Assembly: GCA_002269645.1 (NCBI GenBank)
Contig: NIVC01000494.1
Span: 434,001 to 498,000, forward strand
Direction: 5' to 3'
Origin: Macrostomum lignano
Lineage: Eukaryota
DNA length: 64,000 nt
The notes beneath the pieces were generated by a model. That model was not told the origin of the DNA. It saw nothing but the letters and a program-made list of their open reading frames with translations, and made no database searches. The translations under genes and the position numbers were made by a program. Below, in pieces: positions 4,989 through 45,467 of this stretch. How positions within the stretch are numbered: the first letter of the stretch is position 1; the number at the start of each line of letters is the position of its first letter.

Positions 4989-11431
<6,443 letters not shown>

Positions 11432-12441: not shown

Positions 12442-13134
12442 ATGGCTTTTATTTTGTTGTTGATTTTTGTCCACTGCCTGATATCTTGGTGAGCAATGGA
12501 TTTTATATTTTATAATTAGTAGATCTAAGAGGTTCCCCACAGGGGTTTTCCAGTCAAATTTCATGTCTAATCCAGTCGGATTTGAAATCGCTAGTCTAGT
12601 TCTAATCTAGTCTTAGTCTAGTTCTAATCTAGTCTTAGTCTAGTTATAATCTAGTCTTATTCTAGTCTAATCTAGTCAAGTATAGTCTACAGACTGGGGC
12701 TTTAGCACCAAGGGCGCCAGCTATTGAACCTTTTATTACGATTCGCTACTACTGTTTCCAGTCAACATAGTATGCAAGCAATTAACAACCAACCCTAACC
12801 TTTCGCAGTGCTGAGGCCGGTCATTACTACTGCGGCAAATACGGCATGGCTGTCAACATGACTGAACAGTCTGGGCCCGTTGACTACCTCATCCTCCCGT
12901 GGGAAGAGGGCCAAAAGAATTTACCCAAGAAACTCAGCTGCAAATGGAAGTTCAGTGGTAGATTCAGTAGGAATGTAATCCTGCTCCTGAAGGGATTCGA
13001 CACTGAAAACGTGGACCTGAGTCTCCGACGAGTGGTGCGATCGGCTAAGCATTCTAGTCTGACAGCTGGAAGAATTCGGTACAGGTTCCTGCCTTATGAA
13101 TGTGAGTCATGCAAGTTATAGCTTATCAACGTGG

Positions 13135-13170
<36 letters not shown>

Positions 13171-13173
13171 GGC

Positions 13174-13210
<37 letters not shown>

Positions 13211-13213
13211 GGC

Positions 13214-13281
<68 letters not shown>

Positions 13282-13299
13282 TGACAGACAGACAGACAC

Positions 13300-13350
<51 letters not shown>

Positions 13351-13351
13351 C

Positions 13352-13390
<39 letters not shown>

Positions 13391-15353
13391 CTCGGGTGCA
13401 CTAACACTCAAAAAGTACCACAACATAGACAACTGAAGTGCATGTTCATGGATGAATGCCTAAGTACGAGGTACTAAACTCAACCCACGTAGATACATTT
13501 TGCGCTGCAATTTCTTGAAGTAAATATTTTTCATTAACGAAATATTTTTTAATCAAGGAAAATAAATGCACACTATGTAATAAAGCGTAAGCTAGGCGAA
13601 AATTCCGTACTGCATGCTCGTCTATGCATTATGAGTTGGACATCCAATATCCAATATTTTGTAGCTTCTCTGACTGCACACAACTTTCATGGCATCGTCC
13701 AGTTTTAGTAGCAAAAGCTGACAAAAGCTAAAGAAGACAACTTTAGGACTCGCGTATGACTAATGACTCGCAAACAAATTTCCAACAGTAAACCTCCCAT
13801 TTCAAACTTAAATGCAGCAACAATTCAATGCTTTCAGACTTTGTCAACGGCAGCTGCTCAGCTCAAGCTGCTCGAGGCTGGCAATCCGTGGAACTGAAGA
13901 CACTTCGCGTTCTACAGTTGCCAAGAAGGTGAAAAATGAATCTGCTTTGGTTTTTACATTTTGCTTTTCCGTTCCTGATTGAACTGCCTATAGCTATTTT
14001 TATCATATCTACTTGAAAGGTTTAATTGCACCTGCAGTAGCGGATTTGGGGGGGGGGGGCAAGAGCATGTGCATGCAGCTCATGATAGTACGTACTATTC
14101 TTAACGTTTTCAAAATTTGCGAAGGTTAGGCCGTACTTTTACTTTTTCAATTCCACTCCTTAGAAGCAATTTACATGTCGAGTTCGACACGGGCTCCAGC
14201 GGGAATCCTCACGACACACCTGGTCTGCGAATCCAGCTGATGGAGCCGGGATTCTGCAGCTCAGACGTTGTCTGTTTTGAGCACAGCTGCTACTCAATCT
14301 CATCGGCTCGGAGGTCGCTGAAAGCAGAGCTGACTGCAATCTGCAGCGATGGAGGACTCGCACAGCTGGCCAGCTTTAACAGCTCCAGCGCTCTGCAGAA
14401 CTTTGTGGCTCAAAGTAAGCTGCCATAGCTACAAGTGACTGAAGATTGCATGGTTGCGCAATTTGACTCAAACTCTGTCGATGACTTTTGCAGGCCAGCG
14501 GACCATTGTTGGAACCGGTCTGAAAGCCCGCAGCAAAACTCCGCTGAATCTCACACAGCCAGTTCGCATCGGGCTTCTGCACGATCGACTGACTGGCTCC
14601 ATTTTCTACCTGAGCAACTCAAATGGCGAACTGGAGCTGAAGCCGCTGGTCGAGTCGAAAATTCTGTGAGCATTTTCTCTTTGGTCTTGCTCTCCATCAG
14701 CTGCCAATCATAAATTGCTCGTATTTCTTAACTGCAGCTACTACAATGTTTGGCCTACGAGTTCGAGATTCTCATGCGGCTCCCTGAAACTTGCTCAGAC
14801 AGCCGATGGCACCGAGGTGTCCTTCGGAGTCGTCGAGTTTGTCAGCTGCAGCGAGTCGCTGCCGGCGCTGCTCAGCTTTCGAGACACCGCCAGAAACTGC
14901 TGCTGCGGCTGCAGCGCCAGAGCTGTGCTCAGCCAGATTGAAAAAGCAGAATCTCACGTATTTGTCTATAAGACTTCCACTGAATCGTCTAATACGACAC
15001 CTATTCCAAAACCTCGGTTGGAAACCGTATCGAAAATCAGTAGGTCTGATGCTGCTGCTCCGAAATCGGATTCCACTGACATTCCCCAAAAATTTTCGCA
15101 AGAAACTGAGACGAATAAAGTTGATTATGATTCATACGTAATTCCATTTTTCGCCGTGCTTGCGTACTCGATTTTGTTAAGTATAGGCATGATCATTGGC
15201 GCTTATTACTTTTGGTACAGGATTCGCTCGCCTCCACCGGGCACATTGACCCGTATTTATTACACGGAAAGCACGCTGGGGCCAAGCAGGACTTCAAGTT
15301 TAGCCCGCAACCCTGCTGATATTTTATTGGACCCCAGCAACCATTGCAGTTAG
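12442..15353 (+). CDS. Gene B2: CUB-like + C-type-lectin-like type I membrane protein, about 489 aa
   Basis: Exons 12442-12488, 12809-13101, 13838-13928, 14164-14414, 14494-14665, 14738-15353 (1470 nt, open, GT-AG). Signal peptide MAFILLLIFVHCLISC. CUB-like C..SG..C.WKF..ILLLKGFD..SNLHVEFDT..GLRIQL. CTLD-like C..FEHSCY..C..LAQLASFNS..RIGL..CGSL..C. TM FFAVLAYSILLSIGMIIGAYYFW. Confidence 0.85.
13135..13390. repeat. (CAGA)n microsatellite in B2 intron 2
   Basis: Tetranucleotide run. It gives the TDRQ and SVCL pseudo-ORFs. Confidence 0.99.
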
Positions 15354-15403
15354 CGACTTTTTTCTCACAGTCTCAATCAACTTTTCTAATTACGAGCTAT
15401 ATA

Positions 15404-15656
15404 CTCAGCAACATTGAAAAGTCGCCATCACAGCGGATTCCGTCTGTGGTCGCCACAAAGTCTCTCAATCTTTGCGAGTGACGCAACTTACACACTGCGG
15501 CAGACTTGAGTTGAGGAATGAAATGGGGTAAGCGGTGTGCGAGGGTTGGACGGATTAAAGCTACCCCGATCAGTTTTCTCGTATCTTTTATTTCAGAATA
15601 GTTTAAGAGAAATTGCTTACTGGCGCATAGAGTGGCGACTTTTCAATGTTGCTGAG
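15404..15656. mobile_element. MITE with about 24-bp terminal inverted repeats and TA flanks, just after the B2 stop codon
   Basis: ctcagcaacattgaaaagtcgcca at 15404 and tggcgactttttcaatgttgctgag ending 15656, with TA on both sides. Absent from the paralogous position after B3. Confidence 0.75.
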
Positions 15657-18454
15657 TACATGTATGTTGTAACGGGACAATAAAATAGAACGATGCACAA
15701 TCAACCAAATCGTATTTGACAAATCTCCTGTACTATAATTGTTTTGGTCAGCTTAAATAATTTGCACTACAACGATGAGTAAAATTGTACATGTGCATGT
15801 ACTGAGGCGACCAATGCTGAATGAACTATAGTTATAGTAGATGCATATCTAATATTTGCTCGTACTAAAATGTATTCTAATTTTTTGTATGATTACTTTT
15901 AGTATTTATCTGACTGGCACTTAGCTCTTTATTCAAGCACTGACCAGTTTTTTTGTTAAATTATATTGCATTAATATTTTGAGCGAATTAATTACTTACG
16001 AGCAAATAGCTGCATACATTTTAAGCCTTCAGAGCTGCAAAAAACAAAAAAAATTAAATTTATTATATTTGAGCTAAATTTGTGTTAAAATGTTCTTTTT
16101 GGTGATCTAATTTCTATGAGCACCATTTTGATATCTTTGATGAGTTGTTTTTCGATTATTCGGCTAAATTATCAACAAACTTTTAATCGGCAATTTACGC
16201 GATTGCCGATTGCACACTCAATCAGTCTTGCATGCAAATTCTGTCCTAATGTTTTTCACTTGAGATAAAAATAAACTAAGTTGACGAAATCTAATAAACT
16301 GAAAGATTTTTTTTCAAAGAATTTTGAAAAATTGATGGATTCGACCTGAGACACCTGAGAACAGATATGTTTCAGCCAGCGAGATTGCTTACGGACAGCC
16401 GAGCCCTCTACCAAGGACATGTGGCCAAATGAATAAAGTGAACAATAACTGGCGAGTTTCACCTCAAACTCTGAGATTAAGCAAGAGCTCGAACTCGACC
16501 AACTGCTCCAGTTCATATGAATAAAGGAATTCCTCAAACACGCGGAGCATTTGCTCCTCATTCTGAGTAACTGCTTGGCACCTCTTGGCCATAGACGAAG
16601 AGAAAGCGGTCATCTCTCGTGTGTCGTATGAATCGCCTTATCTTTCGTAATAGCGTCTGTCTCGAAGTAGAAACTGACTTAGCTTAGGTTTGCGTCAGTT
16701 TGATTTCAACAGGAATTCAACAGAGATGGGCCCGGTAGAAACTGACGACGACGAGATCCCAGAAACCCAACGCTTTCACGAGAGAAACGAAAGAGCCGCT
16801 TATTCTCATCGTCGCGATACACGTCCATACTGTGTCGTTCCATATATAGTTTTCGCTCCGCAGGCACTCTGTCTGGAATGAATTCGGCCATCTGGAATAA
16901 CACAAGGTTCACTTTCAAAGCAGTGGCTGGATGCTGCTCAACCAGTAAGTCTACTACAGAGGAGACTCAACTTTTGGTAAGCAAGATCTCAAGAAAATTT
17001 GTCTAGGACCAGAGTTTATTCATATACTGAAGCGAGTCTCTACTCCGTCACCGAGCATTTGCTCACGGGGAGAGCACTAACTCTTGGGAAATTGATTTTG
17101 AGCACTTGCTCAGGAGGACGCACTCATTTTATTCATACTGATTTGAGAATCTCGCCGAGTTTGAGGAACTACTCACTTTATTCATACGGCCAATGGTGAT
17201 GGAAGCTCCTTGTTTGGCGACTCTGTCTTCGATATGCCGAGGCAATGCAGCTCCGGCTTCCAGGTGGCGTCCGGCTTCCCGGCTTCTGGAAATCTTACAC
17301 AGACAGCATGCAACAGCTAGGAAAAACTTGTTGTAGCTCGTATTGGACGCGAGCTGCTCCGACACAAGGCAGACTTTCAGCTGGTTATTGTCGGTGAGAT
17401 TTTGCGTAGTTTGGCATCGGTGCAGGTGTGGAATTCGTCTCAATTTCTAAATTTTATAGAGTTGCTAGGGTGCTTTATAATGGAATAAAACGCTATCCCA
17501 AAAATTGAAAGTCCCTATAGTTGGAGTGACGCAACTCACGCCATACCGCTAGGTTGTTCATCATACTATAAGGTCAATTTTAAAATGAGTCTGAACCAAC
17601 CGTAGAATTATTTGAACAGTCTGACCCGCGCAGCTTACTGGCGGCAATGTTGAACGGCTTTTGATGTATACAACGGCCCCAGCTTTCTTATCATGCATAA
17701 CCGTCCAAGGACCACTAGAAGTTACCGTTTTATCAGGGTGAATTCTGCCGTAATTTCTAGTAGAATTCTGCCGTAAGGTACATATACAAGTATGAATGTT
17801 TTAGCCATATGGCTAGCAGCCGAGCTCCAAACAATGACCTCTGAATCCAAACAATTCAACAGTTTAACTAACTTTCGGTGACTTAAATGAAGTAAAACAA
17901 ATTATCACTGTATCCCCCCCAATTAATTGAGAATGTGCAAAGAATTAACATGGTTAAAATACACAATCACAAACAATACTTTTTATAAACAATAAATAAA
18001 TAATTACGGAATTAAAATGAAAGGTCAACTTTACAAAGCAGCATGATAAAGTTTCCAGCCTTTTAAACCAGTGGTAAACAAATGACAGCGCTTTAATTAA
18101 ACTCCAGATATAATCTGGGATCCGATTATCCGATCAGATTTGCTTCTCACTAAGCTTAAACTGATTGAAAGTTCGAGCTAGTCGATCTTATAGCATTTCT
18201 GGCATACGAAAAGGCATATGCAAAACACCCATGCAATCAAAGGGGTCCCGATAAAGATTGCTCCCTCTTGATCGCTCTGTCTGTCCACTCTAGCTATTAG
18301 GACATATTCTCTACATTGGGGCTGACTACTGGCCCCGAGACCGCATTCGTTTTTGTACGTTCGTCTGCAGAAAAAGCATTTAACTACGAGTAATTTCTAG
18401 ATAAATAACAGATAAAACACCCCTCCACGCAAGACCCTGACAGCTGAAGAATAC

Positions 18455-18770
18455 AAATGAAGATAAAGAGCGACGGTTAGTGGGCCGTTAAAAGAACCGA
18501 CCTCAGGGAGATGTACATGGTCCTAACCGGCAACGGATTTTTCCAGAGACATGTTTCGTTGCAAACCGGTTGCCCTGCCACCTGCCTTTTCTGTGACGTA
18601 GGAGAAGAGACCGCGGAGTATCAAGTCACTTTCTGCCCTTTACTTCAATAAGGCGCGGCACAAGCTGCACAATCTGCCACTCCCAGCGGATGGACGAGCT
18701 GACCACCCTGGCAAAAACCCGTTATCTTCACGCCTTCGTCTGAGATACCGGCTGGATTGAGACTTGAGTT
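18455..18770 (+). mobile_element. Degenerate 3' end of a non-LTR retrotransposon (R1/LOA/I-type C-terminal zinc knuckle)
   Basis: Translates as [37 protein letters not shown], matching the LTG.G.F..H..C..C..ET..H..CP motif. A paralogous copy is at 28630-28950. Confidence 0.6.
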
Positions 18771-19429
18771 AGGGGAAGTGGATACCAGATGGCCGTCACT
18801 CGGTAAATTAGGACGTGATTGGCTCGAGAGCAGGGGTAGCCGGATGGCGTTCCTGCCGCGTGCCAAAGAGTGACCGGATGGTCGGGTCGCACAAAAGATC
18901 CGAGCCGAAAAATGCCGTCTTGTACATGTATAGATTTCCAGCGATCTGTGCATCTTAATTAAGCAATTTTATGACTTTTTGATTACGCTCGTAAACGAGC
19001 ATGAACTCAAGCTGGTAAATCGATTTTGAGAGGTTGAGGTTAATTTTAACCTCGTACTTCAAACCCTACCCTATAAAACTTGACAGGTGCCGTCATAGAT
19101 CAAGAAAAAACACAAAAGAAAAGAAAAGTAGTCCTAAAAAGTACATCCGGGTCCTAAAATACAAGCCTAAGAACTAACAATGGAGATAAGAACCCTAAGC
19201 ATGCCTACTAGCAGTAGTTACATTACATTACAACGACGCTAGGGTCGGGGGTAGTATTGGTTTTTGCATGCTAAGTGAGACATTTTTCAAGCAATCTGAG
19301 ACTGAATAGCAAAAACACTATTGTCTATGGCCACCCCTCGCTGCAGCCCAGCGTTTGGGATCGCCTTGAAAGCAAATTGAGAAATTTTTAAAGCTAAGTG
19401 AGAACCATATTGAAAACAAAGGCTGGGCT

Positions 19430-19573
19430 ATGGCAAATCAACAGCGTCTAACAAGCAACGAGGATAGAGAGCACCTGGTCAATGCCGTCGAAGATGGTTA
19501 CTCAATTTCGACTGCGTCCAAAATCCTTAATCTGAACAAGAACAAGTGTATCAACATGCAACCCTTTGTTTGA
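19430..19573 (+). mobile_element. Possible N-terminal HTH remnant of a Tc1/IS630-like transposase
   Basis: MANQQRLTSNEDREHLVNAVEDGYSISTASKILNLNK resembles transposase HTH starts. It is short and has no catalytic domain. Confidence 0.4.
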
Positions 19574-19667
19574 ACGCTTATAACATTATCAACAATTTTT
19601 GTACCGCTTGTTTTGTTGTGTTCCTGCGTATCCTTTTCTAAATATATAGTTTCCGACGGGAGCACGA

Positions 19668-19920
19668 GAAATGCCCGCAGATGAATTGCCCGCCGAGATT
19701 TGCCCGCAGGAGATTTGCCCGTGGAGATTTGCCCGCCGAGCTTTTCCCGCGGAGATTTGCCCGCAGTGCATTTTGCCCGTGAGCGAATTGCCGTGGAGAT
19801 TTGCCCGCCGAGAATTGCCCGCCGAGATTTGCCCGCAATGCAATTTTCCCGCGAGTGAATTGCCCGCGAGCGAATTGCCCGCCGAGTTTTTTCCCGCCGA
19901 GGTTTGCCCGCAATGCTTTT
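19668..19920. repeat. Degenerate 15-16-bp tandem repeat (gagatttgcccgc core)
   Basis: Recurrent ttgcccgc core. Stop-free frames give the GQISAGN and PAEIC pseudo-ORFs. Confidence 0.85.
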
Positions 19921-20579
19921 TTGCAGCGCATTTGGCAGCTAGATTCTGTCTATACATTGCTCCCCCCAAAATATACATTTGATATGCAGTTACTATCAAA
20001 ACGTTTTGATCGTGTAAATCTCTTTATTGAGATTAACACGTACAAAGCATTGGGAAGGCAATGCAGACAAAATCTGCCGCGTGGCAATTTAATAAATAAT
20101 TTTGAGAGGTTGAGTTTAATTTTAACCTCGTGCTTCAAACCCTACCCTATAAAACTTGACAGGTGCCGTCATTGATCAAGAAAAAACACAAAAGAAAAGA
20201 AAAGTGGTCCTAAAAAGTACATCCGGGTCCTAAAATACAAGCCAAAGAACTAACAATGGAGATAAGGACCCTAAGCATGCCTACTAGCAGTAGTTACATT
20301 ACATTACAACGACGCTAGGGTCGGGGGTAGTAGTAGTAGTAGAGAAAGAATAAGTCCAGTGAGGTGTTCTAGGATTGAAAAAAGTGCTTTCCCATCATTT
20401 TAAATAATTGTTCTAAATCAAAATGACTATGAAGGTATTCCTCTCGCATTTTTCGACGCATATTTAATATATACAATCTCTTGTGGGTGGACCATTTTTC
20501 AAGAAGTCCTCAACAGAGCAGAAGCAAATCAAACAAACAGCAAAAGAATTCAGTAGGATGGATTTCTCGAGAAGAGACT

Positions 20580-21340
20580 TCCTTGCTGCCCAACATCAGC
20601 TGGGAGCTCGTTAACAGAGAACCGGCCTAAAGGCTGAAGAAGCCCGGATGGAGGAGACGAGCTGTCGCTGAGCAAGAAAGTAAAGACATGCTGGACATCC
20701 CTAGGATCAGAGACCCCCTGAAGCGTCGTGGAGCAGCGGGAAGTCCGTTCGCTGTACCGTGAGCGGAACTCGACTTGACTCAAAAGAGGAAAACAGAGCC
20801 AAAGGTGTGGCTATGGTGGCGGCTGCAAGTGCCGGCACCGACTTCACTATTTTCACGGATGACTTGGTCAGTGCGGAAGGCAGAGGCAGCAGCGAAGCCG
20901 TCGTGATGCGCTGCGCTGATACCTGCAAGGATGACATTGGAGCGGGAGACATCATCGAGAAGCCAGCAGGAGAGGTGACCAGAGGTGATTTACAGGACCT
21001 CGGGCGTAGGGTTAGGCTTGCGTGTGTGCCAGCGCACTCAATGAGCCAGCCAAGGAGGGCGTGAGATCGCAGCGGGAGCGACTTGAGGCAGACTGAATGC
21101 TAAGCTACGTCTTGAGACTGCCAACTTTAGCCTCGACAGATGCCGCAATGTCTTCGGAGGTGGTAACACGGGGAATAAGACCGCGTTCAGCTCCATAGCC
21201 GTCAGCTTCCGCCGTTTTAGATCGGGACGTTCTCTGGAGCTCGCGTCCGAACTAAGATATCAATAAGGACGCAGAGCGTTGCAGATGCTGCGCGGTCACC
21301 TTCTGGACCAGGGCCAGACACGCCATCACTGAGTTTTCCG
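20580..21340 (+). mobile_element. Degenerate LINE remnant (RNase H-like + Cys/His knuckle)
   Basis: GC-rich insert absent from the paralogous spacer (about 29890). TIFTD...VRLACVPAH resembles LINE RNase H motifs (IFTDS / WVPAH). Downstream RCRCC..RHA. Followed by a hAT-like end caggggtcggcaacc at 21352. Confidence 0.45.
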
Positions 21341-22390: not shown

Positions 22391-22434
22391 ATGCTCAGCC
22401 TCTGGTTACTGTGGACATGCAGCATCCTGCTTGG
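22391..22434 (+). other. Extra copy of the B3/B4 signal-peptide exon (MLSLWLLWTCSILLG|gtaagc): orphan or alternative first exon
   Basis: 44-nt exon with intact ATG and donor, plus about 250 bp upstream, matching 24860-24903 and 34503-34546. Confidence 0.75.
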
Positions 22435-22530
22435 GTAAGCAAATAACCTTTTAACAATTGTTTACCGCAACAAATATGCAACAAACAAAAAAAGACATCA
22501 AGCGCATTTGAAGATACAACTGCTGGTATG

Positions 22531-23555: not shown

Positions 23556-23574
23556 AGATACAACTGCTGGTATG

Positions 23575-34502: not shown

Positions 34503-37500
34503 ATGCTCAGCCTCTGGTTACTGTGGACAAGCAGCATCCTGTTTGGGTAAGCAAATAACATTTTAACAATATTTTACCGCAAAAAATATCAAAGAAAAAG
34601 AGAAATCAAGTGACTAGTAATTATTCATTCAAGATTAAAAACTGGGTAAACTGCTACCTGAGTTACCTAGGCTTTTGAAGATACAAATACTATATTTATT
34701 AAAACGACTTGTCCTCTTTCCAAAAAAACTAAATTAGATTAAAAGACAGGGTCTCAAACATTTTACTGTTTATTGCTTTGGTCCATGTTCGACCGAAGTA
34801 GCTCGTATTTTATTATAACATTTGTGCTTTGTGTGTAACACTGCATTTTTACCCTATCATAATTCACTATACAACATTTGCATCCTAATAAAAGTGTAAA
34901 ATTTGATAAACAAAAACCTTGTCGTGTCGCTAACTTCCCAGGAACTATTAGCTACATTCTAGAAATTTTGATATATGCATACAATTATTTACGAGTAGTT
35001 AGCTCGTAGTTCACTGTAAAGTTAACAACACAACAACAAAATACGCTGTCATGATGGTAAAAGTCAGCGTCACAGGGCGCGCTTCATGGCTTGGGCGCGA
35101 ACAAAGGCCGCGCCACCGGCAGTGTCCGGGGCGCCGGCGTCAGCCAGCAGACAGTCGACATAACGCCGAGTTCGCGCTTGACCTCGCCGGTAGGGTGCCT
35201 GCAGCGTGAGCAGCAGCACCTCCTGCACCGGCTGTGGGCAGTACGACTCGGCGCGGATGAGATGGCCTGCGAGCTGGAGTAGCCGACGGCGCAGTAGATC
35301 ACTTGGACGTGGCAGGCCAGCGCGGCGATAGAGTGCCGCGTTGGTGACTCGCTCGACGCCGATGTTGAAGGCGGCGCGCAGCAGACCAGCGTGCGCCGCA
35401 TCGACTTGCTGTTCGAGTGAGTCCGTCAGCGTCCAGGTCTCGGCGTTGTACAGCAGGACGGTCTCGATTACCGCCTGGAACAGCGCCGCCCTCTGGCGGT
35501 CCGGTAGGGCCTCGGACTGCAGGACTGCCCTCACAGAACGAAAGGCAGCCCAGGCAAGCCCGCGGCGGCGTCGCAGGTCCTCGCGAGCGTCTGGAACCAG
35601 ACCGCCGAGGTAGACGAACTGCTGACATCGCGGGAGTTCGGTCGCCTGCCCGTCAGCGCCTCGGCAAAATATTGCAGCCTCGATGTCGTCCGGCACGCAC
35701 AGCACAACGGTCTTCTGCGTGTTGACCACCAGGCCGACACTCGCCGCAACGGCAACCAGCCTGTCCAGCTGCCGTTGGGCGCCCTCGACGGTCGAGGACA
35801 GCAGGGCGAGGTCGTCGGCGTAGCCAAGCACGCTGAGCCGCTTCTCCGGTTGACGTCGACCCACGCGTCGCTGCAGCAGAAAACCGTCGTCGTCGGTAGG
35901 AAGAGCAGTTCGCAGCACCCAGTCAAGCACCAGGACGAACAGGAAAGGCGCCAGCGTATCTCCCTGAAGCACTCCGGAGGATGTCTCAAAGGAGTCCGAT
36001 AGGCCGTCCGGTGTTGTCACAGCAGCTGTCGTATCACGGTACATCGCCATGATGGCGGAGATCAGCTGCTCAGGCACGTTGTACGCGCGGAGCACCATTG
36101 GAAGCACGGCTCTGACAACCGAGTCGAATGCCTTCTTGAAATCAATAAAGATTAAAATCAGGATCGACTGACGAATCCGCGCCTCCTCGATGACTCGGCG
36201 AAGAGCCAGGATCTGCGCCACTGTGCCGCGATGGGGCCGGAACCCGTTCTGCTCTGGGCGCAGGTACGGATCCAGCACGGGCTGCAACCGCGAAAGCAGC
36301 ATCCGGTTGAACAGCTTCGCTGCACAGGACTGAAGGCAGATGCCTCGATGGTCTTCAAGCCTAGTGGTGCCCGGCTTCTTTGGAACAGCGACGATGTGCG
36401 CCGTGGTCCATTCGTTGGGCGCCGCCTCACCGAAGAGCACGCGGTTCATCACTCTGGCGACCTCAGCGGCCACACAGGGGATGCGCAGCGCCTCGATGGG
36501 CACCTCGTCCGGACCCAGCGCTTTCCCGCCCGGTGACTGCTGGGCGAGCTTGACAACGTCGGCTGCGTTGACTGGAGCTACGCTGAAACTCTCCTCTGCC
36601 GGCAGCGGCGTCTCCGGCGGCAGCGTCAGACTGTCTGGCAGCGGGGGTGGCGGCGCGTTGACGATGGCGGCGAAGAACTCGCGCAGCTCGTTCCTACGCT
36701 CGTCCGGCGTGTCACCAGCCAGGTTCAGCGGATTGCGCCGCTTTCGTCCCGTCAGAGCGTTGATGGCGGACCAGGCCACGCGCCCTCTGGCATCGGGCCC
36801 AGCGGCAGAGACAGCCTGAATGGCGTCATCGACAAGTTAACTACGTAAAGTTAACTACGAGCATTACCCAACTATTCTGGCAATTTCTATGCCCTATCCG
36901 TATGCCAAATATGGGCAACGTTCATAGAAACTTCCCTCGCGCATCCCCGATCAGTCTAGAAATAGAAACATCCCCTGTTAGCATAACCAAGACTCTCATC
37001 TCATGCTACTGCGCTGCTGGTTACTAGCTATGTACTAGATGTATTACTAGCAGCTTTCTTAGCTGCCGAACACTTTTTGTCGGTCTGACAACGCCGATAA
37101 TTTGATTTTTCTGTGACTCTGTTCGTTCATTTACTCAAAGATACAAAAAACATCTTGTTAAGTTGTTATAATAGCCAAATTGACTCTCAGAAACCATAAT
37201 GTCTGGTATTTAGATGCTAAATAGAATCGGTAAAATAGAGAGAATGGATTGCAAGGAAGGCTATCATGGCAGCTATTAAGAACTTGAATTCGATTTCAGA
37301 TTCCTGATGAAGTCTTTGCATTGACCTGGGACTACTCAATACTCGGGACAGTAAATGTCAAAGCTTGAAAAGCCTATCTATCAATAACTTAGTCCTCGAA
37401 AATAATTACTTTGCTATGTTCCACCTTGTCGTCATTAAGTTTGTGTCTCTGGTAAAAACCTATCTAATTATTAGGCCTCAAGTTTGTCGTTTCCAGTCCC

Positions 37501-40289
37501 GAGTATTGAGCAGTCCCTGACATTATCCTTAAGTTCTGACCTTCGTCCAGCCACCCACTGACTATCCCAAAAAGATTTTATATATTTATAAAATATCGCA
37601 GCCGACGTTGTCAAGCTCGCCCAGCAGTCACCGGGCGGGAAAGCGCTGGGTCCGGACGAGGTGCCCATCGAGGCGCTGCGCATCCCCTGTGTGGCCGCTG
37701 AGGTCGCCAGAGTGATGAACCGCGTGCTCTTCGGTGAGGCGGCGCCCAACGAATGGACCACGGCGCACATCGTCGCTGTTCCAAAGAAGCCGGGCACCAC
37801 TAGGCTTGAAGACCATCGAGGCATCTGCCTTCAGTCCTGTGCAGCGAAGCTGTTCAACCGGATGCTGCTTTCGCGGTTGCAGCCCGTGCTGGATCCGTAC
37901 CTGCGCCCAGAGCAGAACGGGTTCCGGCCCCATCGCGGCACAGTGGCGCAGATCCTGGCTCTTCGCCGAGTCATCGAGGAGGCGCGGATTCGTCAGTCGA
38001 TCCTGATTTTAATCTTTATTGATTTCAAGAAGGCATTCGACTCGGTTGTCAGAGCCGTGCTTCCAATGGTGCTCCGCGCGTACAACGTGCCTGAGCAGCT
38101 GATCTCCGCCATCATGGCGATGTACCGTGATACGACAGCTGCTGTGACAACACCGGACGGCCTATCGGACTCCTTTGAGACATCCTCCGGAGTGCTTCAG
38201 GGAGATACGCTGGCGCCTTTCCTGTTCGTCCTGGTGCTTGACTGGGTGCTGCGAACTGCTCTTCCTACCGACGACGACGGTTTTCTGCTGCAGCGACGCG
38301 TGGGTCGACGTCAACCGGAGAAGCGGCTCAGCGTGCTTGGCTACGCCGACGACCTCGCCCTGCTGTCCTCGACCGTCGAGGGCGCCCAACGGCAGCTGGA
38401 CAGGCTGGTTGCCGTTGCGGCGAGTGTCGGCCTGGTGGTCAACACGCAGAAGACCGTTGTGCTGTGCGTGCCGGACGACATCGAGGCTGCAATATTTTGC
38501 CGAGGCGCTGACGGGCAGGCGACCGAACTCCCGCGATGTCAGCAGTTCGTCTACCTCGGCGGTCTGGTTCCAGACGCTCGCGAGGACCTGCGACGCCGCC
38601 GCGGGCTTGCCTGGGCTGCCTTTCGTTCTGTGAGGGCAGTCCTGCAGTCCGAGGCCCTACCGGACCGCCAGATGGCGGCGCTGTTCCAGGCGGTGATCGA
38701 GACCGTCCTGCTGTACAACGCCGAGACCTGGACGCTGACGGACTCACTCGAACAGCAAGTCGATGCGGCGCACGCTGGTCTGCTGCGCGCCGCCTTCAAC
38801 ATCGGCGTCGAGCGAGTCACCAACGCGGCACTCTATCGCCGCGCTGGCCTGCCACGTCCAAGTGATCTACTGCGCCGTCGGCGACTCCAGCTCGCAGGCC
38901 ATCTCATCCGCGCCGAGTCGTACTGCCCACAGCCGGTGCAGGAGGTGCTGCTGCTCACGCTGCAGGCACCCTACCGGCGAGGTCAAGCGCGAACTCGGCG
39001 TTATGTCGACTGTCTGCTGGCTGACGCCGGCGCCCCGGACACTGCCGGTGGCGCGGCCTTTGTTCGCGCCCAAGCCATGAAGCGCGCCCTGTGACGCTGA
39101 CTTTTACCATCATGACAGCGTATTTTGTTGTTGTTTGTTGTATAAAATATCTAGAGCATGCTATCATAAATTATCTTCAAACCTGACGCAGAGCCGAGGC
39201 GGGACACTACTACTGTCGCGTTGGTGGAACAATTGTTGAAACCAGCGACCAACATGAACGCGTTGATCACTTGGTACTGCCATGGAAAGAAAACGCGATC
39301 AATTCAGCCAATATTAGTCACGAATGCAAATGGCAGTTCGAAGGTAATTTCAGTAGTGATCCCATCATGCTCCTGAGAGGATTTGACACATCCAAGGTGG
39401 ACCTGAGTCGCAGAAGGGTCGTCAGATCGGCTGAGTCTTCGATTTCGAGTTCGAGTACACCAGCTGCACGAATTCAGTACCGATTCGTGCTCGATCCTTG
39501 TGAGTAATCACATATTGTTATTACTGACTATGGAATTGCTTTTGCACTCTCAATATTGATGGTTCTTATTGTCTTGACTCTTGATTATGCTGTCTGTTAA
39601 TATTGATGTAACCGCCCTTGTCGCCTGTCCGCTCCGTTGAGAGACGAACGCATGACTAGAGGGGGCAATGACCGTAGGCTGCCTATGACCGGGCAATGAC
39701 CTGACGGACCTCCAGCACCAGACTGTCCCGCCCACATGATTGATAGCTTTGGTAGCGCTTCGTGACCAGAGGGCCAAGGACCCACATGGACCCCACCTGT
39801 AGCCAAGGTGCAATAGTTGGTCACTCGGTCATAGTCATAGTATGACCGAGTGGCTGCCACCACTCTATGTGACCTGGCCCAAAAAGTCAAAGTTGAATTT
39901 TATTTGTTTCGTGACTTGACGATAGCATGAATGTTTGAACTCTCGGATTGATCCCTTTCTGACATAATCGCGGCATCTAGGAATTCCCTAAGCAAGTGCC
40001 GAAGCAATTCGAACTCGCAAGTAGTGACTATCAATAGACTTTATCAGCCAATTCCAGAATTCCAGAATTGCGTGAATTCAAGAACGCTTACCATAAAACT
40101 TCATATTATTCCTTCATCTATGGCACATAGCTACAAACTGCCAGAACGAGCTATAAAAGAAAATTAGTCTATGGGAAAAAATGGCCATTGGAGTCTCGAA
40201 TAAAAAGTACAGCAAAATACTCTTGATGAAGAGTTCGCTTTAGCACACTAGAGAGAGAGGGAAAGAGAGAGAGAGAGAAAGAGAAGAGA

Positions 40290-40366
<77 letters not shown>

Positions 40367-43300
40367 TAATCTAGTGTCAAACGCACGAACTCCCACTTCC
40401 AGACCTCAAGCCTGGGAACAAAGTTCAGTGTTCACTTACTGATGCGGGCTCCTCTTCTTTGTCGGGCAGGTTCTCCGAGCTCATCTCTTCAAATATTCTT
40501 TCTCCGGAGTAGTCTTCTTGAATTATAGAATCGGCCGAATATGAGAGCTCAATAACTTAGTCCGTCGACGTCAATATATTTCTCGAGTGCAGAAATCGAT
40601 ATATTCCTCGAGTGCAGAAACCAATATATTCCTCGAGTGCAGAAATCAATATATTCCTCGAGTGCAGAAATCAATATATTCCTCGAGTGCAGAAACCAAT
40701 ATATTCCTCGAGTGTAGAAATCAATATATTCCTCGAGTGCAGAAATCAATATATTCCTCGAGTGCAGAAACCAATATATTCCTCGAGTGTAGAAATCGAT
40801 ATATTCCTCGAGTGTAGAAATCGATATATTCCTCGAGTGCAGAGATGCGCCCAATAAAAAAGCAAGGACTACTTAACAATTTAGGACGTTACACTCGCGA
40901 TTGGTAGAAATTCTAGAAAAGGCCGCTTGCTTTAGCTGTTTCTCTGGCTTTTCAATAAGCTTTTTCGATAAAGAAGCGAGTGCTAACCTATCTAGTGATA
41001 GGTGCTCATAAACTGTTCGCTATATATATATTTTTTTACGAATATACAATTAATAAATACAAATATAGTCGGTACAAGAAGTACATTACAATTGAAGAGT
41101 AGGATATGCAACTGATGGAACTCAGTATACAACTGTATAAGGCAAAATAGATCCAGATGAACATAAAGATGTTTAAAAGAGACATTCAGCTAGGTTTCAG
41201 TTTGCGAAGTCGGCGAGAGCAAGCAGTGGTTGATTGCCTGAAGTCTCGGATTCCTTTATAGATGGAGTTGGCCAGCCTTCGAGACACTCGCACACACAAT
41301 TTTTTTCGAATATTTTCTCAAACAAGCACGGAACTGTCAACACAACGCTGCCCAGAATCGCCTAGAAGAAATTGCTGACGAGGATCAGATGATTTTACCG
41401 GTAGACAGATCGACTGAAGCGCAGCTATGTGAGAATGAGCTGCAGGGCTTGCAGAGATTTCACAGCTGCGCGTCCTGTTGAAAATTGCTTCCAGTTGACT
41501 GCGCTGCAGCCTGTGCTGAAAACCCAACTGCCATGTAGATGCTAGCCTTCTACAGATAAAATTGAATAATCACCGCAATACAGTCACTCGCGTATCTTTA
41601 TAGTAAGGACGAGAAATTAGGGTCAAAAGTTACATGAATTACCTTAACTTGCACAGGCAACGCATTGAGCCATGCTTCAGCTTCAGCTTCTTCCTTTGGA
41701 AAGCCGAAAACAGTGCATTTTTCGCCGCTTTTATAATTGCTTCTGCATCCTGGGACGCAGCATTCATTGGCATTTTGAACAAAAAGAACGTGTGATAAGA
41801 ATTTGGACGAAAAACAAAAATTGTTGCTTCACTTTGTTTAAACCTTGCACTGAGAGTATGAGAGTTTGTTAGTGAAAAGGCTTCATTGCCATAGACACAG
41901 CGGAGCAAGCGGCCTTTTCTAGAAGTTCTACCATTCGCGAGTGTAACGTCCTGAGTTGTTAAGTAGTCTTTGTAAAAAAGTTAACTTTATAACAACAACG
42001 AGATCCTCCGAAAGGGCGTCTTCTTCTAGAAATAACGGAATCAGAGTCGTGTGCTCCTATCGGTTACTCTAGGGTACCAAACTCAATCAATCAGTAATCG
42101 ACTAAGAGTATTGGAATCGGTCCGCAGATCCTATCCAATCCCTTAGGAATAGGGCGGCCTCAAATTCAATAGCTCAATAAATCGACTGATCAGTAACGGC
42201 CGGCAATGACACAGCTCTCACTAATCGAATAACAAAGACTCAAATAACAAAGACTCTAACAAAGGCTTACCAATTGGTGTTTGTCTCTCTCAGAGATATA
42301 GCCTTGCTTAGTAGCTCTGGCTAAGCCTAAGATCTCTTAAGGCTGCTCCGAGTCTGAGGTTTCAGCTCGGATTTTCGCTTGTATTTATACACGATTTCAT
42401 TCGACCTTGAGCTTCAAACTGGTTTTATTGATAAGAATCAAAAGATGGACTTTGTCTCTTGACCGGTGGGGTTTTACATAGAAAGGGGGTGAAGCTTAGA
42501 TCGCATTAAATTGACATTTAACATATTTGGAAAACCGATTTTTCGGACTATGTAACGATCACTCGCAGTTTACGTGATATTGCATGCATTACTGAAAATA
42601 GAGTATGACGCATGTTAGTTTTAAATAGTATTCATGTTTTTATCTTGCTACTTTTAGTAGGCTACTATGTTTAGAGATCTCTACATTGAAATCAACTCGA
42701 ACCAGATTAACTAGAACCAAACTCATCTTACTGAGTAACGAGGTTAATTTGGGTAAAAAATGGAGACAAAGGTCTTTTAAAGTCTAAGTTTTTAACTTTA
42801 AGCTGCCGGATGGTCACCAGAGCTGACCACGGACCAACAGCCTTTACTGCCGGTAATGTTTTGGAGTCTATGGTAAAAGAAAAGTTATGTGCTGCATAGT
42901 ACACCTTTTCACGTTCAATTTTGAACAAAGTCCAGTTCTAAAAAAACTAGCGGAAATTCAATTCAGACAATTCAGACTGGGGACAATTTTGTCTATGGCT
43001 AAACCTCGCTTCCGTAGCAGAATGTTTAGAACTGGGTTTTGTTGCCCCAGTCTGAATTGTCTGAATTGAATTTCCGCTAGTTTTTTTAGAACTGGACTTT
43101 GTTCAAAATTGAACGTGAAAAGGTGTAGTTGTACCTGCCGAGCAGGATCAGCAGCGTTGATCATACGAAAAATGGGTGAAAAAGTCCTACTTATCTGCAA
43201 TGGAATCCAGTGACTCGGTTTTAGCATTCTCTGTGATGACATCATCAGTCTCAGAATCTGATGTATGCAAAAGTTCCATGGTTGTAGCTGATTTACTTTT

Positions 43301-45467
43301 CAATAAAATGATGCACTACTCGTATTAAGGAAGTCCAGTGCTTTCTCTTTCAAAAAAGCCTGTTTGCAGATTTTAAAGTGAACTGTAGCTAGTGGCTATT
43401 GCTAGATATCGAGTGCACACACTGCATAATCTATGTAAATAATAAACGCCGTTTAATTCACATTCTGTGGTTAGAATGTCCGAGGCTGCGTTTAATGGTC
43501 TCGAGGCTACGCTAGTGCTACGCTCGCCTCGAGACCATTAAACGCAGCCTCGGACATTCTAACCATAGACTATGATGAATTAAACGGCGTTTATCATATA
43601 TTAAATTCGATTGCTTCTGATTTCGAGGAGATTATATGATATAATATCCTAGTTTTTGTTAAAAATTACCACAGACAACACATTCCCGGCTCAGAATAGT
43701 ACAATTTTTTTACGATTAAATAAGCAATCGTATTTTATATAGAGAGCATTAAGAAAAATGCACTTTGAAACTGCTTTTTTCGACCCTAGATTTGTCCAAG
43801 CCAAGTATAAAATGCTCCCTTCTCGGCTAGAAAGGCTTTGCACAGCGGCGCATTAAGATTCTAGCTATAGTCTATGGCCAGCCCAGCTGACCGTGTCGGC
43901 AGGAACGGAGCTTTTGTATTTCTAGCTCCGGCGCGAAAAGGGACTGCAATTATCCAATAAATTAGCTACTGAAACGCACCTCAAATTTTGATTTCAGAAA
44001 CAATAACTTTAAATTATTTTCCTCTTTCAGTCGTTTCTAAAGGAACCTGTCCTGGTAGAGCTAATCGAGACTGGCGCTCTGTGGACCTGGACACGGTTCG
44101 AGTTTTTCAGATTTCAAAACGGTAGGTTCTTCCGCCTCTAACCGGTAGTTCAGCTAAATTTTAATTTTAGTTGAACGTTGTTCTACACTTCAGGGCTGAT
44201 TTGATTGTCCAGTTTACCGCTAACTCGAGCGGGAATCCCCACGACACACCAAGTCTGCAAATCCAGCTGATGGAGCCGGGATTCTGCAGCAAGGACGTTG
44301 TATACTTTGAGCACAGCTGCTACTCAATCTCATCGGCTCGGAGGTCACTGAAAGCAGAGCTGACAGCAATCTGCAGAGATGCAGGACTCGCACAGTTGGC
44401 CTCTTTTAACAGCTCCAGCGCTCTGCAGAACTTTGTGGAAAAAAGTAAGCTGCCATGGTTATAAGTGGCTGAGGATTGCATGATTACGCAATTTGACTCA
44501 AACTCTGTGGATGACTTTTGCAGGCCAGCGGACCCGTGTTGGAACCGGTATGAAAGCCCGCAGCAAAACTCCGCTGAATCTCACACAGCCAGTTCGCATC
44601 GGGCTTCTGCACGATCGACTGAATGACTCCATTTTCTACCTGAGTAATTCAAAGGGCGAGCTGGAGCTGAAGCCGCTTGTCGATTCCAGTAATCTGTGAG
44701 TATTTTCTCTATAGTCTTGTTCTCCATCAGGTGCCAGTCATAAATTGCTCGTATTTCTTAACTTCAGCTACTACAATGTCCGACCTACGAGTTCGAGATT
44801 CACGTGCGGCTGCCTCAGACTTGCTCAGACAGCCGATGGCACCGAGGTGTCCTTCGGAGTCGTCGAGTTTGTCAGCTGCAGCGAGTCGCTGCCGGCGCTG
44901 CTCAGCTTTCGAGACACCGCCAGAAACTGCTGCTGCGGCTGCAGCGCCAGAGCTGTGCTCAGCCAGATTGAAAGTGCGGAATCTCAAGCTACACCTAGTG
45001 AGATGCCACCCAGTTCAGCAGCTAGTGTGACTCCAAGTGGGACATCCAGTACAAAGACTACTGCACCGCATCGATCTGAAACTAGCAAGGCTGAGAAAGT
45101 CACACCGCCATCTGACTCTACCGATGCTTGTCGAAAGTCAACTGATGTTTGTAAGAGGGAGAGCTACAATTTCTTTATTCCGTTTGTAATTGTGCTCATC
45201 CTGCTTGTACTGGTGATCATAGTTTTTGTTGGTTATTGTATGTGCCATAATCGTGCGTCAAAACGCACTGATAAGAATGAAGTCAAATCAGATCAGATCA
45301 CCGAAGGATGGAGCGTCGACACATCCTCTACACCCCAATCTTCAGTACAGAACAGCAGAATCGCCAGTCGGAATTCATTGCATATTTGGAACAACAGTTT
45401 TGACCATAATGACTTGCAGAAACATTATTCATCGTGCAGCTATGCAGCTTTATCCACGAATGAATAA
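34503..45467 (+). CDS. Gene B4: CUB-like + CTLD-like type I membrane protein, about 521 aa, with two TE-expanded introns
   Basis: Exons 34503-34546, 39192-39499, 44031-44121, 44194-44444, 44524-44695, 44768-45467 (1566 nt, open, GT-AG). Exon sizes 44/308/91/251/172 are identical to B3. TM FFIPFVIVLILLVLVIIVFVGYCMC. Confidence 0.82.
35027..36833 (-). mobile_element. 5'-truncated RTE-group non-LTR retrotransposon (intact RT domain), copy 1
   Basis: ORF 35070-36779 has EQNGFR, FIDFKKAFDSV, SGVLQGDTLAPFLF, LGYADDL, FVYLG. (TTG)-type 3' tail. gtaaagttaac at 35016-35026 and 36845-36855 is the likely TSD. No endonuclease region present. Confidence 0.93.
37598..39140 (+). mobile_element. 5'-truncated RTE-group non-LTR retrotransposon, copy 2 (inverted relative to copy 1)
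   Basis: ORF 37661-39094 is almost identical to copy 1. 11-bp TSD tataaaatatc at 37587-37597 and 39141-39151. The empty site is visible in the B3 intron near 25300. Confidence 0.95.
40250..40362. repeat. (GA)n microsatellite
   Basis: Dinucleotide run. Confidence 0.98.
40573..40842. repeat. 25-bp minisatellite (aatatattcctcgagtgcagaaacc), about 11 copies
   Basis: Unit starts at 40573, 40598, 40623 and onward. Confidence 0.95.
40867..41968. mobile_element. About 1.1-kb non-autonomous element with 65-bp terminal inverted repeats
   Basis: 40867-40931 is the reverse complement of 41904-41968 with few mismatches. No transposase ORF inside. Confidence 0.7.
42900..43127. mobile_element. Foldback MITE: perfect 83-bp inverted arms, TA ends
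   Basis: 42900-42982 is the reverse complement of 43045-43127, with a 62-bp loop. Confidence 0.85.
43442..43594. mobile_element. Palindromic MITE (about 153 bp)
   Basis: ataaacgccgtttaattca..tggttagaatgtccgaggctgcgtttaatggtctcgaggc is mirrored by its reverse complement around a short loop. Confidence 0.8.

What the first reader, a model, noticed from the sequence alone, without database searches (positions are those of the whole stretch)
12442..45467. B3 is an anti-Lepore-type chimera: 5' half from B4, 3' half from B2
Seen: B3 exons 1-3 and introns closely match B4 (same 44/308/91-nt exons) but not B2. B3's stalk, TM, tail, 3' UTR and downstream spacer match B2 but not B4. Exons 4 to the start of 6 are highly similar in all three. 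The duplicated block runs from mid-gene to mid-next-gene. Established: this order (parent, hybrid, parent) is the product of unequal crossover between tandem paralogs, as in anti-Lepore globin. Inference: the cluster shuffles CUB-like ectodomains onto different tails.
Basis: partly seen in the sequence, partly recalled or inferred. Interest (0 to 1): 0.72.

Follow-up and report, generated by a model that had tools for sequence, protein, structure and literature searches.

The report
Chimeric middle gene from unequal crossover
In a tandem cluster of flatworm (Macrostomum lignano) membrane-receptor-like genes, the middle gene B3 really is a hybrid with the front of its downstream neighbour and the back of its upstream neighbour, a clean but textbook product of unequal crossing-over.

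Summary
The window is Macrostomum lignano contig NIVC01000494.1. B2, B3 and B4 are six-exon, same-strand paralogs. Each encodes a signal peptide, a CUB-like head, a C-type-lectin-like core, a stalk, a TM segment and a tail.

B3's upstream region and exons 1-3 match B4 (74-93%) and not B2 (51-65%). Its stalk, TM segment and tail match B2 (90%) and not B4 (52%). The core is 80-96% alike in all three.

Of 421 informative coding sites, the best single breakpoint lies in exon 4 (about 26150-26250; Fisher P = 3e-61). The stretch from mid-B2 to mid-B3 is collinear, block by block, with the stretch from mid-B3 to mid-B4. This includes unique spacer DNA, so it is a tandem segmental duplication and not a conversion tract.

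Head and tail have similar ages (dS 0.149 and 0.125). A second subgenome copy (L001) carries the same chimera with the same switch, so the event is old and not an assembly artefact.

Refinements:
- Gene conversion has since blurred the core.
- The B3 copy in this window has lost its intron-1 splice acceptor (AG to AA) and is unannotated.
- B4 has gained more than 11 kb of insertions.

The mechanism is already well known, so interest is modest.

The parts
12442..15353 (+). B2, the upstream parent. Six exons, 489 aa (NCBI Mlig003791g1). It has the type-A head (exons 1-3), the shared C-type-lectin-like core, and the type-a stalk, TM segment and cytoplasmic tail.
   Evidence: Gene model. The translation matches P0027.
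24860..27247 (+). B3, the chimera. Six exons with an intact 493-codon reading frame. The head (upstream region and exons 1-3) is B4-type. The stalk, TM segment, tail and 3' flank are B2-type.
   Evidence: It is not among the called genes of this contig. Its core is 100% identical to UniProt model P0003.
34503..45467 (+). B4, the downstream parent. Six exons, 521 aa (Mlig033487g1). It has the type-B head, the shared core and the type-b tail. Introns 1 and 2 are enlarged by insertions.
   Evidence: The model translates exactly to P0002.
14176..26850 (+). Duplication unit copy 1: the B2 core and tail, the spacer, and the B3 head and core. Measured breakpoint to breakpoint it runs about 14262-26147 (11.9 kb).
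   Evidence: Collinear BLAST chain with copy 2.
26062..44986 (+). Duplication unit copy 2: the B3 core and tail, the spacer, and the B4 head and core. Measured breakpoint to breakpoint it runs about 26148-44291 (18.1 kb). It is longer because of the insertions listed below.
26080..26250 (+). Inferred crossover zone in B3 exon 4, at the start of the C-type-lectin-like domain. B3 is B4-like to the left and falls in the B2 clade to the right.
   Evidence: Informative-site runs. Best single breakpoint at 26147/26148. Block identity matrix, which shows the same switch in L001 B3h.
26050..26850 (+). Shared core in B3 (exon 4 to the first ~215 nt of exon 6). The homologous stretches are B2 14164-14956 and B4 44194-44986. 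It encodes the C-type-lectin-like domain and shows a patchwork of B2-like and B4-like sites.
25350..25351 (+). B3 intron-1 acceptor reads AA where B4, L001 B3h and the L003 head fragment read AG. The next AG (25352-25353) would shift the frame by 2 nt.
22381..22424 (+). A second, intact 44-nt copy of exon 1 (ATG...TTGG|GTAAGC) with its upstream region (22219-22502). It lies 2.4 kb upstream of the proximal B3 exon 1 and is 88% identical to the B4 exon-1 region.
   Evidence: It is also present in L001.
30250..33801 (.). Tandem array of a 23-bp unit, 154 copies. It is specific to copy 2 and has no counterpart in copy 1.
35024..39139 (.). Two inverted copies, 99.7% identical, of a reverse-transcriptase element (arms 35024-36567 and 37597-39139) in B4 intron 1. 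They flank native intron sequence, part of which (37175-37305) is homologous to B3 intron 1.
   Evidence: (RVT_1, E = 1e-28)..
39538..43966 (.). About 4.4 kb present in B4 intron 2 and absent from B3 intron 2. It contains a 25-bp array and a THAP-domain ORF on the minus strand (41601-41828).
15399..15661 (.). MITE-like element with 29-nt inverted-repeat ends in the B2 3' flank. It is also present in L001 B2h and B3h and absent from the B3 of this window.

Best explanation
B3 arose by non-allelic homologous recombination (unequal crossing-over). A B4-type gene on one chromatid mispaired with a B2-type gene on the other.

The two genes paired through the only part they share at high identity, the exons 4-6 core that encodes a C-type-lectin-like domain. 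The crossover fell in exon 4. This duplicated in tandem the roughly 12 kb between mid-B2 and mid-B4 and created an in-frame hybrid gene. The hybrid carries the B4 promoter region, signal peptide and CUB-like head, joined to most of the B2 lectin-like core and the B2 stalk, TM segment, cytoplasmic tail and 3' flank.

The event predates the divergence of the paralogous subgenome copies of M. lignano.

Later changes:
- Gene conversion kept exchanging patches of the core between the copies.
- Copy 2 gained a 3.5-kb satellite array, two reverse-transcriptase element copies and a 4.4-kb intron insertion.
- The B3 copy in this window lost its intron-1 acceptor and is probably a decaying copy, while the L001 copy is intact.

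Shown here: the mosaic, the duplicated unit, the breakpoint zone, the similar ages of the two halves, and the presence of the chimera in a second locus. Inferred: that the mechanism was a crossover rather than another route to the same structure, and any functional consequence.
For: - Mosaic identity table and 421 informative sites with a single best breakpoint at P = 3e-61.
- A collinear chain of ten blocks between unit 1 and unit 2, in the same order and orientation, including unique spacer sequence that occurs nowhere else in the window, L003 or L004.
- No B2-upstream sequence lies ahead of B3, and no B2-type downstream sequence lies after B4.
- The junction is in frame, at homologous exon positions, in a region where B2 and B4 are 85-96% identical.
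- dS is 0.149 for the head (B3-B4), 0.125 for the tail (B3-B2) and 0.156 for the core (B2-B4). By contrast, head dS for B3-B2 is 1.13.
- Independent contig L001 (NIVC01000416.1) carries B2h, the spacer and B3h, with the same chimeric structure and the same switch between blocks 26050-26250 and 26251-26450.
- L003 carries a B3-type upstream region plus exons 1-3 next to its B2-like gene.
- Units 1 and 2 differ by 9-28%. This is far more than the ~2% between assembly paralogs (PMC10733133), so the duplication is not an assembly artefact.
Against: - No outgroup locus with the ancestral two-gene state, and no reciprocal B2/B4 deletion product, was available.
- Inside the core, B3 is a patchwork (36 B2-like and 23 B4-like sites between 26083 and 26842), so the breakpoint is a zone and not a point.
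- B2-B4 core identity is as high as B3-parent identity. This requires a homogenisation of the cores shortly before the event, continued conversion after it, or both.
- B3-B3h divergence (dS 0.09-0.14) is much larger than B2-B2h (0.035). A strict clock with a single origin does not predict that.
- Copy 1 has two exon-1 regions and copy 2 has one, with mosaic similarity between them. The simple model does not explain this.
- Adjacency of B3 to B4 is seen on one contig only, because L001 could not be extended.
Confidence: 0.85

Rival explanations
1. Three whole-gene paralogs already existed. Interparalog gene conversion, with no change in copy number, then overwrote the B3 head with B4 sequence or the B3 tail with B2 sequence.
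For: - Gene conversion is clearly active in this cluster. B3 in the window is 99.5-100% identical to L001 B2h across intron 4 and exon 5, and L001 B3h is 97-99% identical to B2 in the window across exon 5 and intron 5.
- Conversion can mimic Lepore-type and anti-Lepore-type chimeras (PMC4041002).
Against: - The B2-like part of B3 continues for about 7.4 kb past the stop codon through unique spacer (27281-34610 matches 15657-22502).
- The B4-like part extends at least 0.6 kb upstream of exon 1.
- The heads of B2 and B4 are too diverged to anchor a conversion tract. Exon 2 is 63% identical and the introns cannot be aligned.
- No B2-upstream sequence is found near B3.
Confidence: 0.06
2. A tandem duplication arose by a homology-independent mechanism, such as replication slippage, template switching or end joining, and its ends happened to lie in B2 and B4.
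For: It would give the same parent, hybrid, parent layout and the same duplicated unit.
Against: The junction lies at exactly homologous, in-frame positions with the exon-intron structure preserved (251-nt exon 4 in all three genes). It also lies inside the only stretch of high B2-B4 identity. Random breakpoints would rarely achieve this.
Confidence: 0.05
3. B3 is an assembly artefact: a chimeric join or false duplication among the three near-identical subgenome copies of the Mlig_3_7 assembly.
For: The assembly is known to misrepresent the copy number of some paralogous blocks (PMC10733133). B3 is not annotated on this contig.
Against: - The two units differ by 9-28% and by many indels, which is not what a false duplication looks like.
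- A second contig carries the same chimera, annotated as a 489-aa gene.
- A UniProt model from an earlier annotation is 100% identical to the B3 core of this window.
Confidence: 0.02

Closest known systems
Haemoglobin anti-Lepore (HBB/HBD fusion flanked by HBD and HBB) and the fixed anti-Lepore duplicates of laurasiatherian and paenungulate mammals (PMC4041002)
   Same: Unequal crossover between misaligned tandem paralogs. The hybrid has the 5' end of the downstream gene and the 3' end of the upstream gene and sits between both parents. Later gene conversion and loss or inactivation of copies are also seen.
   Different: - The family is a lineage-restricted flatworm type I membrane protein and not a globin.
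- The parents share only a central core, while their heads and tails are highly diverged. The crossover therefore swaps whole protein modules rather than a few residues.
- No reciprocal Lepore product is known here.
Natural-killer-receptor clusters (C-type-lectin-like Ly49/KLR genes, and KIR genes) that evolve by unequal crossing-over and domain shuffling. This comparison comes from my own knowledge and was not tested here.
   Same: Tandem arrays of receptor-like genes in which recombination within conserved segments recombines ligand-binding parts with different stalk, TM and signalling tails. The core here has a C-type-lectin-like fold.
   Different: - The relationship is at fold level only. 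There is no sequence-level membership: no Pfam Lectin_C hit, and PDB sequence E-values near 0.09.
- These are type I proteins with an N-terminal CUB-like head.
- Function, ligands and expression are unknown.
Hybrid glycophorins (GYPA/GYPB), red/green opsin arrays, and CYP21A2/TNXB RCCX chimeras. These come from my own knowledge; the RCCX papers were listed.
   Same: Non-allelic homologous recombination (NAHR) between tandem paralogs yields in-frame hybrids and changes in copy number.
   Different: Those are recent, polymorphic human alleles. The event here is old (dS about 0.13-0.15) and is shared by paralogous subgenome copies.

Membership tests
Anti-Lepore-type unequal-crossover duplicate | Three same-orientation tandem genes, with the hybrid between the two parents | tested here: met
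   B2 12442-15353, B3 24860-27247 and B4 34503-45467 are all on the + strand, with no other family exons between them.
Anti-Lepore-type unequal-crossover duplicate | The hybrid has the 5' part of the downstream parent and the 3' part of the upstream parent | tested here: met
   Exons 1-3: B3-B4 90-93% and B3-B2 51-65%. Tail: B3-B2 90% and B3-B4 52%. Informative sites are 158/16 to the left of the breakpoint and 34/213 to the right.
Anti-Lepore-type unequal-crossover duplicate | A copy-number gain in the form of a tandem duplicated unit running from mid-gene to mid-next-gene, including intergenic DNA. This is what separates it from gene conversion. | tested here: met
   Ten collinear blocks link 14176-26850 to 26062-44986. 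The spacer blocks are two-copy only.
Anti-Lepore-type unequal-crossover duplicate | Junction at homologous, in-frame positions within a tract of parent-to-parent homology | tested here: met
   The switch lies in the 251-nt exon 4, at about 26150-26250. B2 and B4 are 85-96% identical across the core.
Anti-Lepore-type unequal-crossover duplicate | Both halves of the hybrid diverged from their parents at the same time | tested here: met
   dS is 0.149 for the head (B3-B4) and 0.125 for the tail (B3-B2). The number of sites is small, so this is approximate.
Anti-Lepore-type unequal-crossover duplicate | An ancestral two-gene state, or the reciprocal single-fusion (Lepore) haplotype, exists | not testable with these tools
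   Only M. lignano sequences were reachable. All three paralogous loci already contain B3-derived sequence. L001 could not be extended.
CUB domain proteins (Pfam PF00431) | A sequence match to the CUB profile | tested here: not met
   There was no Pfam hit at E <= 1 for B3-like and B5-like proteins. UniProt's name 'CUB domain-containing' is automatic.
CUB domain proteins (Pfam PF00431) | CUB beta-sandwich fold in the N-terminal head | tested here: inconclusive
   The AF2 model of B4 (pLDDT 72) matches neuropilin-2 CUB1 (6gh8_A) at TM 0.54 and E = 2e-4, and matches Gpr126 and neuropilin-1 more weakly.
C-type lectin-like domain (CTLD) proteins | CTLD fold in the conserved core | tested here: met
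   Foldseek matches to LOX-1, CLEC5A, NKR-P1B, CD69, NKG2D and Mincle, with target TM-scores of 0.6-0.76 and probability 1.00.
C-type lectin-like domain (CTLD) proteins | A sequence match to the Lectin_C profile, or to solved CTLDs | tested here: not met
   No Pfam hit. A profile search of PDB sequences gave only CD69, at E about 0.09.

The most novel reading that the evidence does not exclude
The conserved C-type-lectin-like core, including its short introns 4 and 5, may be kept homogeneous by gene conversion. It would then act as a recombination hinge, letting this Macrostomum-restricted receptor-like family repeatedly re-pair diverged CUB-like recognition heads with diverged stalk, TM and cytoplasmic tails. 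That would make it a flatworm counterpart of the modular evolution of natural-killer-receptor clusters.

Observations that fit this reading:
- Four head-tail combinations exist: B2, B3, B4 and P0004 on L003.
- B2 and B3 core patches are swapped between subgenome copies.
- dN/dS in the tail is near neutral (0.88).
Probability: 0.25. Interest if true: 0.55.

Novelty: new member of a known kind. Interest (0 to 1): 0.3.

Why it matters
This is a clean case in which both parents, the hybrid and the whole duplicated unit are still readable. It shows how a single crossover in a shared domain creates a new gene, joining one paralog's promoter and ligand-facing head to another's membrane anchor and cytoplasmic tail.

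In the neopolyploid M. lignano, the three subgenome copies of the cluster have since taken different routes:
- The window has a B3 with an intact reading frame but a dead intron-1 splice acceptor.
- L001 has an intact B3.
- L003 has a truncated B3 head and a B2-like gene with a third kind of tail.

The locus could therefore serve as a small model for how fast tandem families rearrange after genome duplication.

It does not reveal a new mechanism. The function of the family is unknown.

Tried and rejected
- **Pfam.** Scans of the proteins gave no domain, so the CUB label could not be confirmed by sequence. A profile search of PDB sequences gave only marginal CD69 hits.
- **Homeologs of B5.** A search found only the window's own gene and an unrelated locus, L004, which shares nothing with the cluster beyond exon 4-like similarity.
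- **Extending L001 past B3h, to see whether a B4 copy follows.** This failed. The B3h protein was not returned by the homolog search, so it could not be looked up.
- **Origin of the novel P0004 tail.** There was no match in the window, in any fetched locus or in any family protein.
- **Literature search for the five gene identifiers.** No papers were found.
- **Spacer homology as shared transposable elements.** Rejected: each block is two-copy only, and the blocks are collinear.
- **The inverted 1.5-kb repeat upstream of B4 exon 2 as an assembly palindrome.** Judged less likely: the arms flank about 1 kb of unique sequence that includes native intron DNA homologous to B3 intron 1.
- **B3 as the ancestral form, with B2 and B4 derived from it.** Rejected: this needs two independent replacements by unknown donors, against a single crossover.
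Full report
**Origin of the window.** A protein search with a rough B3 translation returned only Macrostomum lignano proteins. Locus L002, fetched for P0002, is 100% identical to window 24503-55467. The window is therefore NIVC01000494.1:434001-498000 of assembly GCA_002269645.1 (Mlig_3_7). It is eukaryotic DNA with short GT-AG introns, microsatellites and retroelements.

**Gene models.** I built six-exon models for B2, B3 and B4.
- The B4 model translates exactly to P0002 (Mlig033487g1).
- The B2 model matches P0027 (Mlig003791g1).
- B3 has an intact 493-codon reading frame but is not among the called genes of the contig.
- Exon lengths are 47/293/91/251/172/616 nt for B2, 44/308/91/251/172/616 nt for B3 and 44/308/91/251/172/700 nt for B4.

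**The mosaic.** The per-part identities are.
- The upstream 300 nt and exons 1-3 of B3 are 74/93/93/90% identical to B4, and only 55/51/63/65% identical to B2.
- Exon 4 through the first 215 nt of exon 6, including introns 4 and 5, is 80-96% identical in all three pairs.
- The rest of exon 6 (stalk, TM segment, cytoplasmic tail) is 90% identical between B3 and B2 and 52% between B3 and B4.

On a codon alignment there are 421 sites where B2 and B4 differ and B3 agrees with one of them. The best single breakpoint is between B3 positions 26147 and 26148, in exon 4. To the left, 158 sites are B4-like and 16 are B2-like. To the right, 34 are B4-like and 213 are B2-like (Fisher P = 3e-61). A block matrix places the switch between 26050-26250 and 26251-26450. 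In the first block, B3-B4 is 90% and B3-B2 is 85%. In the second, B3 falls in the B2 clade.

**The duplicated unit.** Self-BLAST gives a collinear, same-strand chain from 14176-26850 to 26062-44986. It covers:
- the B2/B3 tails (90%);
- seven blocks of intergenic spacer (70-95%);
- the exon-1 region (88%);
- the exon-2 region (91%);
- exon 3 through the core (88%).

Each spacer block has exactly two copies in the window and none in L003 or L004. The blocks are therefore unique sequence that was duplicated once, not dispersed repeats. Nothing upstream of B2 recurs ahead of B3, and nothing downstream of B4 resembles the B2 or B3 flank.

Measured from breakpoint to breakpoint, the units are about 11.9 kb and 18.1 kb. 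Copy 2 is longer for three reasons:
- a 23-bp x 154 tandem array at 30250-33801;
- two inverted copies, 99.7% identical, of a reverse-transcriptase element in B4 intron 1 (35024-36567 and 37597-39139; RVT_1);
- about 4.4 kb of extra sequence in B4 intron 2 (39538-43966).

**Age, and a second locus.** Synonymous divergence is 0.149 for the head (B3-B4) and 0.125 for the tail (B3-B2). For B3-B2 heads it is 1.13. The two halves of B3 therefore left their parents at about the same time, and the heads of B2 and B4 are ancient paralogs.

Mlig_3_7 holds about three paralogous copies of most of the genome, with a mean SNP divergence of 2.2% (PMC10733133). I found the two other copies of this cluster.
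- **L001** (NIVC01000416.1) is collinear with window 2688-27282 at 90-97%. It carries a B2 copy, with an 11.7-kb retroelement in intron 2, and an intact B3 copy annotated at 489 aa. That B3 copy has the same chimeric layout and the same switch in exon 4.
- **L003** (NIVC01001089.1) carries a B2-like gene, P0004. Its core turns B4-like near the end of exon 5 and then runs into a third, unrelated TM tail. It is followed by a B3-type upstream region with exons 1-3, which is broken at the start of exon 4 and abuts a divergent family member.

The chimera is therefore older than the split of the subgenome copies, and it is not an assembly artefact.

**Later exchange.** Within the core, B3 is a patchwork, and the patches are swapped between loci.
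- Window B3 is 99.5-100% identical to L001 B2h across intron 4 and exon 5.
- L001 B3h is 97-99% identical to window B2 across exon 5 and intron 5.
- The 3' flank of L001 B3h matches the B2 flank at 92.6%, while the flank of window B3 matches it at only 76%.
- B2-B4 core dS (0.156) is as low as the B3-parent values.

Together these show that gene conversion or further crossovers keep acting on the core. The original breakpoint can therefore be given only as a zone.

**What the proteins are.** Pfam finds no domain. An exhaustive HMMER search of 1.84 billion representative proteins found only 22 relatives. All 13 whose source was looked up are M. lignano proteins.

An AlphaFold2 model of B4 (pLDDT 72, pTM 0.65), compared with the PDB, gives the following architecture:
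- Residues about 180-345 form a C-type-lectin-like domain. The matches are LOX-1, CLEC5A, NKR-P1B, CD69 and NKG2D, with target TM-scores of 0.6-0.76.
- The N-terminal beta-sandwich is weakly CUB-like (neuropilin-2 CUB1, TM 0.54).
- A low-confidence Ser/Thr/Pro-rich stalk, one TM helix and a short cytoplasmic tail follow.

The crossover thus sits just inside the lectin-like domain. B3 joins the B4 CUB-like head to the B2 membrane-proximal and cytoplasmic parts. Tail dN/dS for B3-B2 is 0.88, which is close to neutral.

**State of B3 in this window.** The intron-1 acceptor reads CGCAA|A, where B4, L001 B3h and the L003 fragment read CGCAG|A. No in-frame alternative AG lies nearby, and the next AG shifts the frame by 2 nt. 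Together with the missing annotation, this suggests that the window copy is decaying, unless the base is an assembly error. A UniProt model, P0003, is 100% identical to the window B3 core, but it is a mis-spliced prediction.

**Mechanism and rivals.** The structure matches the definition of an anti-Lepore duplicate (PMC4041002) on every feature I could test.
- **Gene conversion alone.** This can mimic the chimerism, but not about 8 kb of duplicated unique spacer. It also has no homology to anchor a tract in the heads.
- **A homology-independent duplication.** This would rarely land in frame at homologous positions inside the only shared tract.
- **An assembly artefact.** This is excluded by the 9-28% divergence between the units and by the second contig.

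I put unequal crossing-over at about 0.85.

**Unexplained points:**
- Copy 1 has two exon-1 regions (22381-22424 and 24860-24903) and copy 2 has one, with mosaic similarity between them.
- B3-B3h divergence is three to four times larger than B2-B2h.

**Verdict.** This is a well-preserved but conventional example of a known process in an uncharacterised, lineage-restricted family. The idea that the cluster shuffles heads onto tails is plausible, with four head-tail combinations seen, but it rests on few cases.

Noticed in passing
window 25350-25351: The B3 intron-1 splice acceptor is AA where the B4, L001 and L003 copies have AG. The next AG would shift the frame. B3 is unannotated on this contig even though its ORF is otherwise intact.
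   Followed up: yes
window 22219-22502 (exon-1 copy at 22381-22424) and 24595-24913: Two copies of the B3/B4-type promoter and exon-1 region lie upstream of B3, and both are also present in L001. B4 has only one, which resembles the distal copy (79-88%) more than the proximal one (72-77%), except at its far 5' end.
   Followed up: partly
window 15399-15661: A 263-bp MITE-like element with 29-nt inverted-repeat ends lies just after the B2 stop codon. It is also present after L001 B2h and B3h and absent after window B3.
   Followed up: partly
window 30250-33801: A tandem array of a 23-bp unit (GGGCACCATAATATACACGAGAG), 154 copies, 96% matches, with strong AT skew. It occurs only in the B3-B4 spacer.
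   Followed up: no
window 35024-36567 and 37597-39139: Two inverted copies, 99.7% identical, of a reverse-transcriptase-encoding element lie in B4 intron 1. They flank about 1 kb of unique sequence that includes native intron DNA.
   Followed up: partly
window 39538-43966: About 4.4 kb is present in B4 intron 2 and absent from B3. It contains a 25-bp x 11 array (40571-40843) and a THAP-domain ORF on the minus strand (41601-41828). No copy was found in the other loci.
   Followed up: partly
L003 10001-15333 and 16049-21100: The third subgenome copy has a B2-like gene (P0004). Its core becomes B4-like near the end of exon 5 and then continues into a unique TM tail. It is followed by a B3-type head (exons 1-3) that is cut at exon 4 and abuts a divergent family member.
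   Followed up: partly
L001 11028-22713: An 11.7-kb insertion with a gag-protease/RT/RNase H gene (L001 12487-14907) lies in intron 2 of the L001 B2 copy. It sits at the position of the (AGAC)n microsatellite of window B2 (13138-13390).
   Followed up: no
window 22530-23556 (ORF 22823-23425): About 1 kb holding a 201-codon ORF with no Pfam hit is present in the window spacer and absent from the collinear L001 spacer.
   Followed up: no
window 1-4068 and 49048-53390: Two further, more divergent family members flank the trio. B1 has an exon-4-like ORF at 1732-2058 and a TM ORF at 3616-4068. B5 is P0025 (Mlig022098g1), 36% identical to B4. Neither shows recent exchange with B2-B4.
   Followed up: partly
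window 5141-5950 vs 57195-58172, and 11090-11428 vs 62060-62419: A second, unrelated gene lying between B1 and B2 appears to be duplicated downstream of B5 (up to 97.7% identity over 575 nt). This hints at a larger-scale duplication around the cluster.
   Followed up: no
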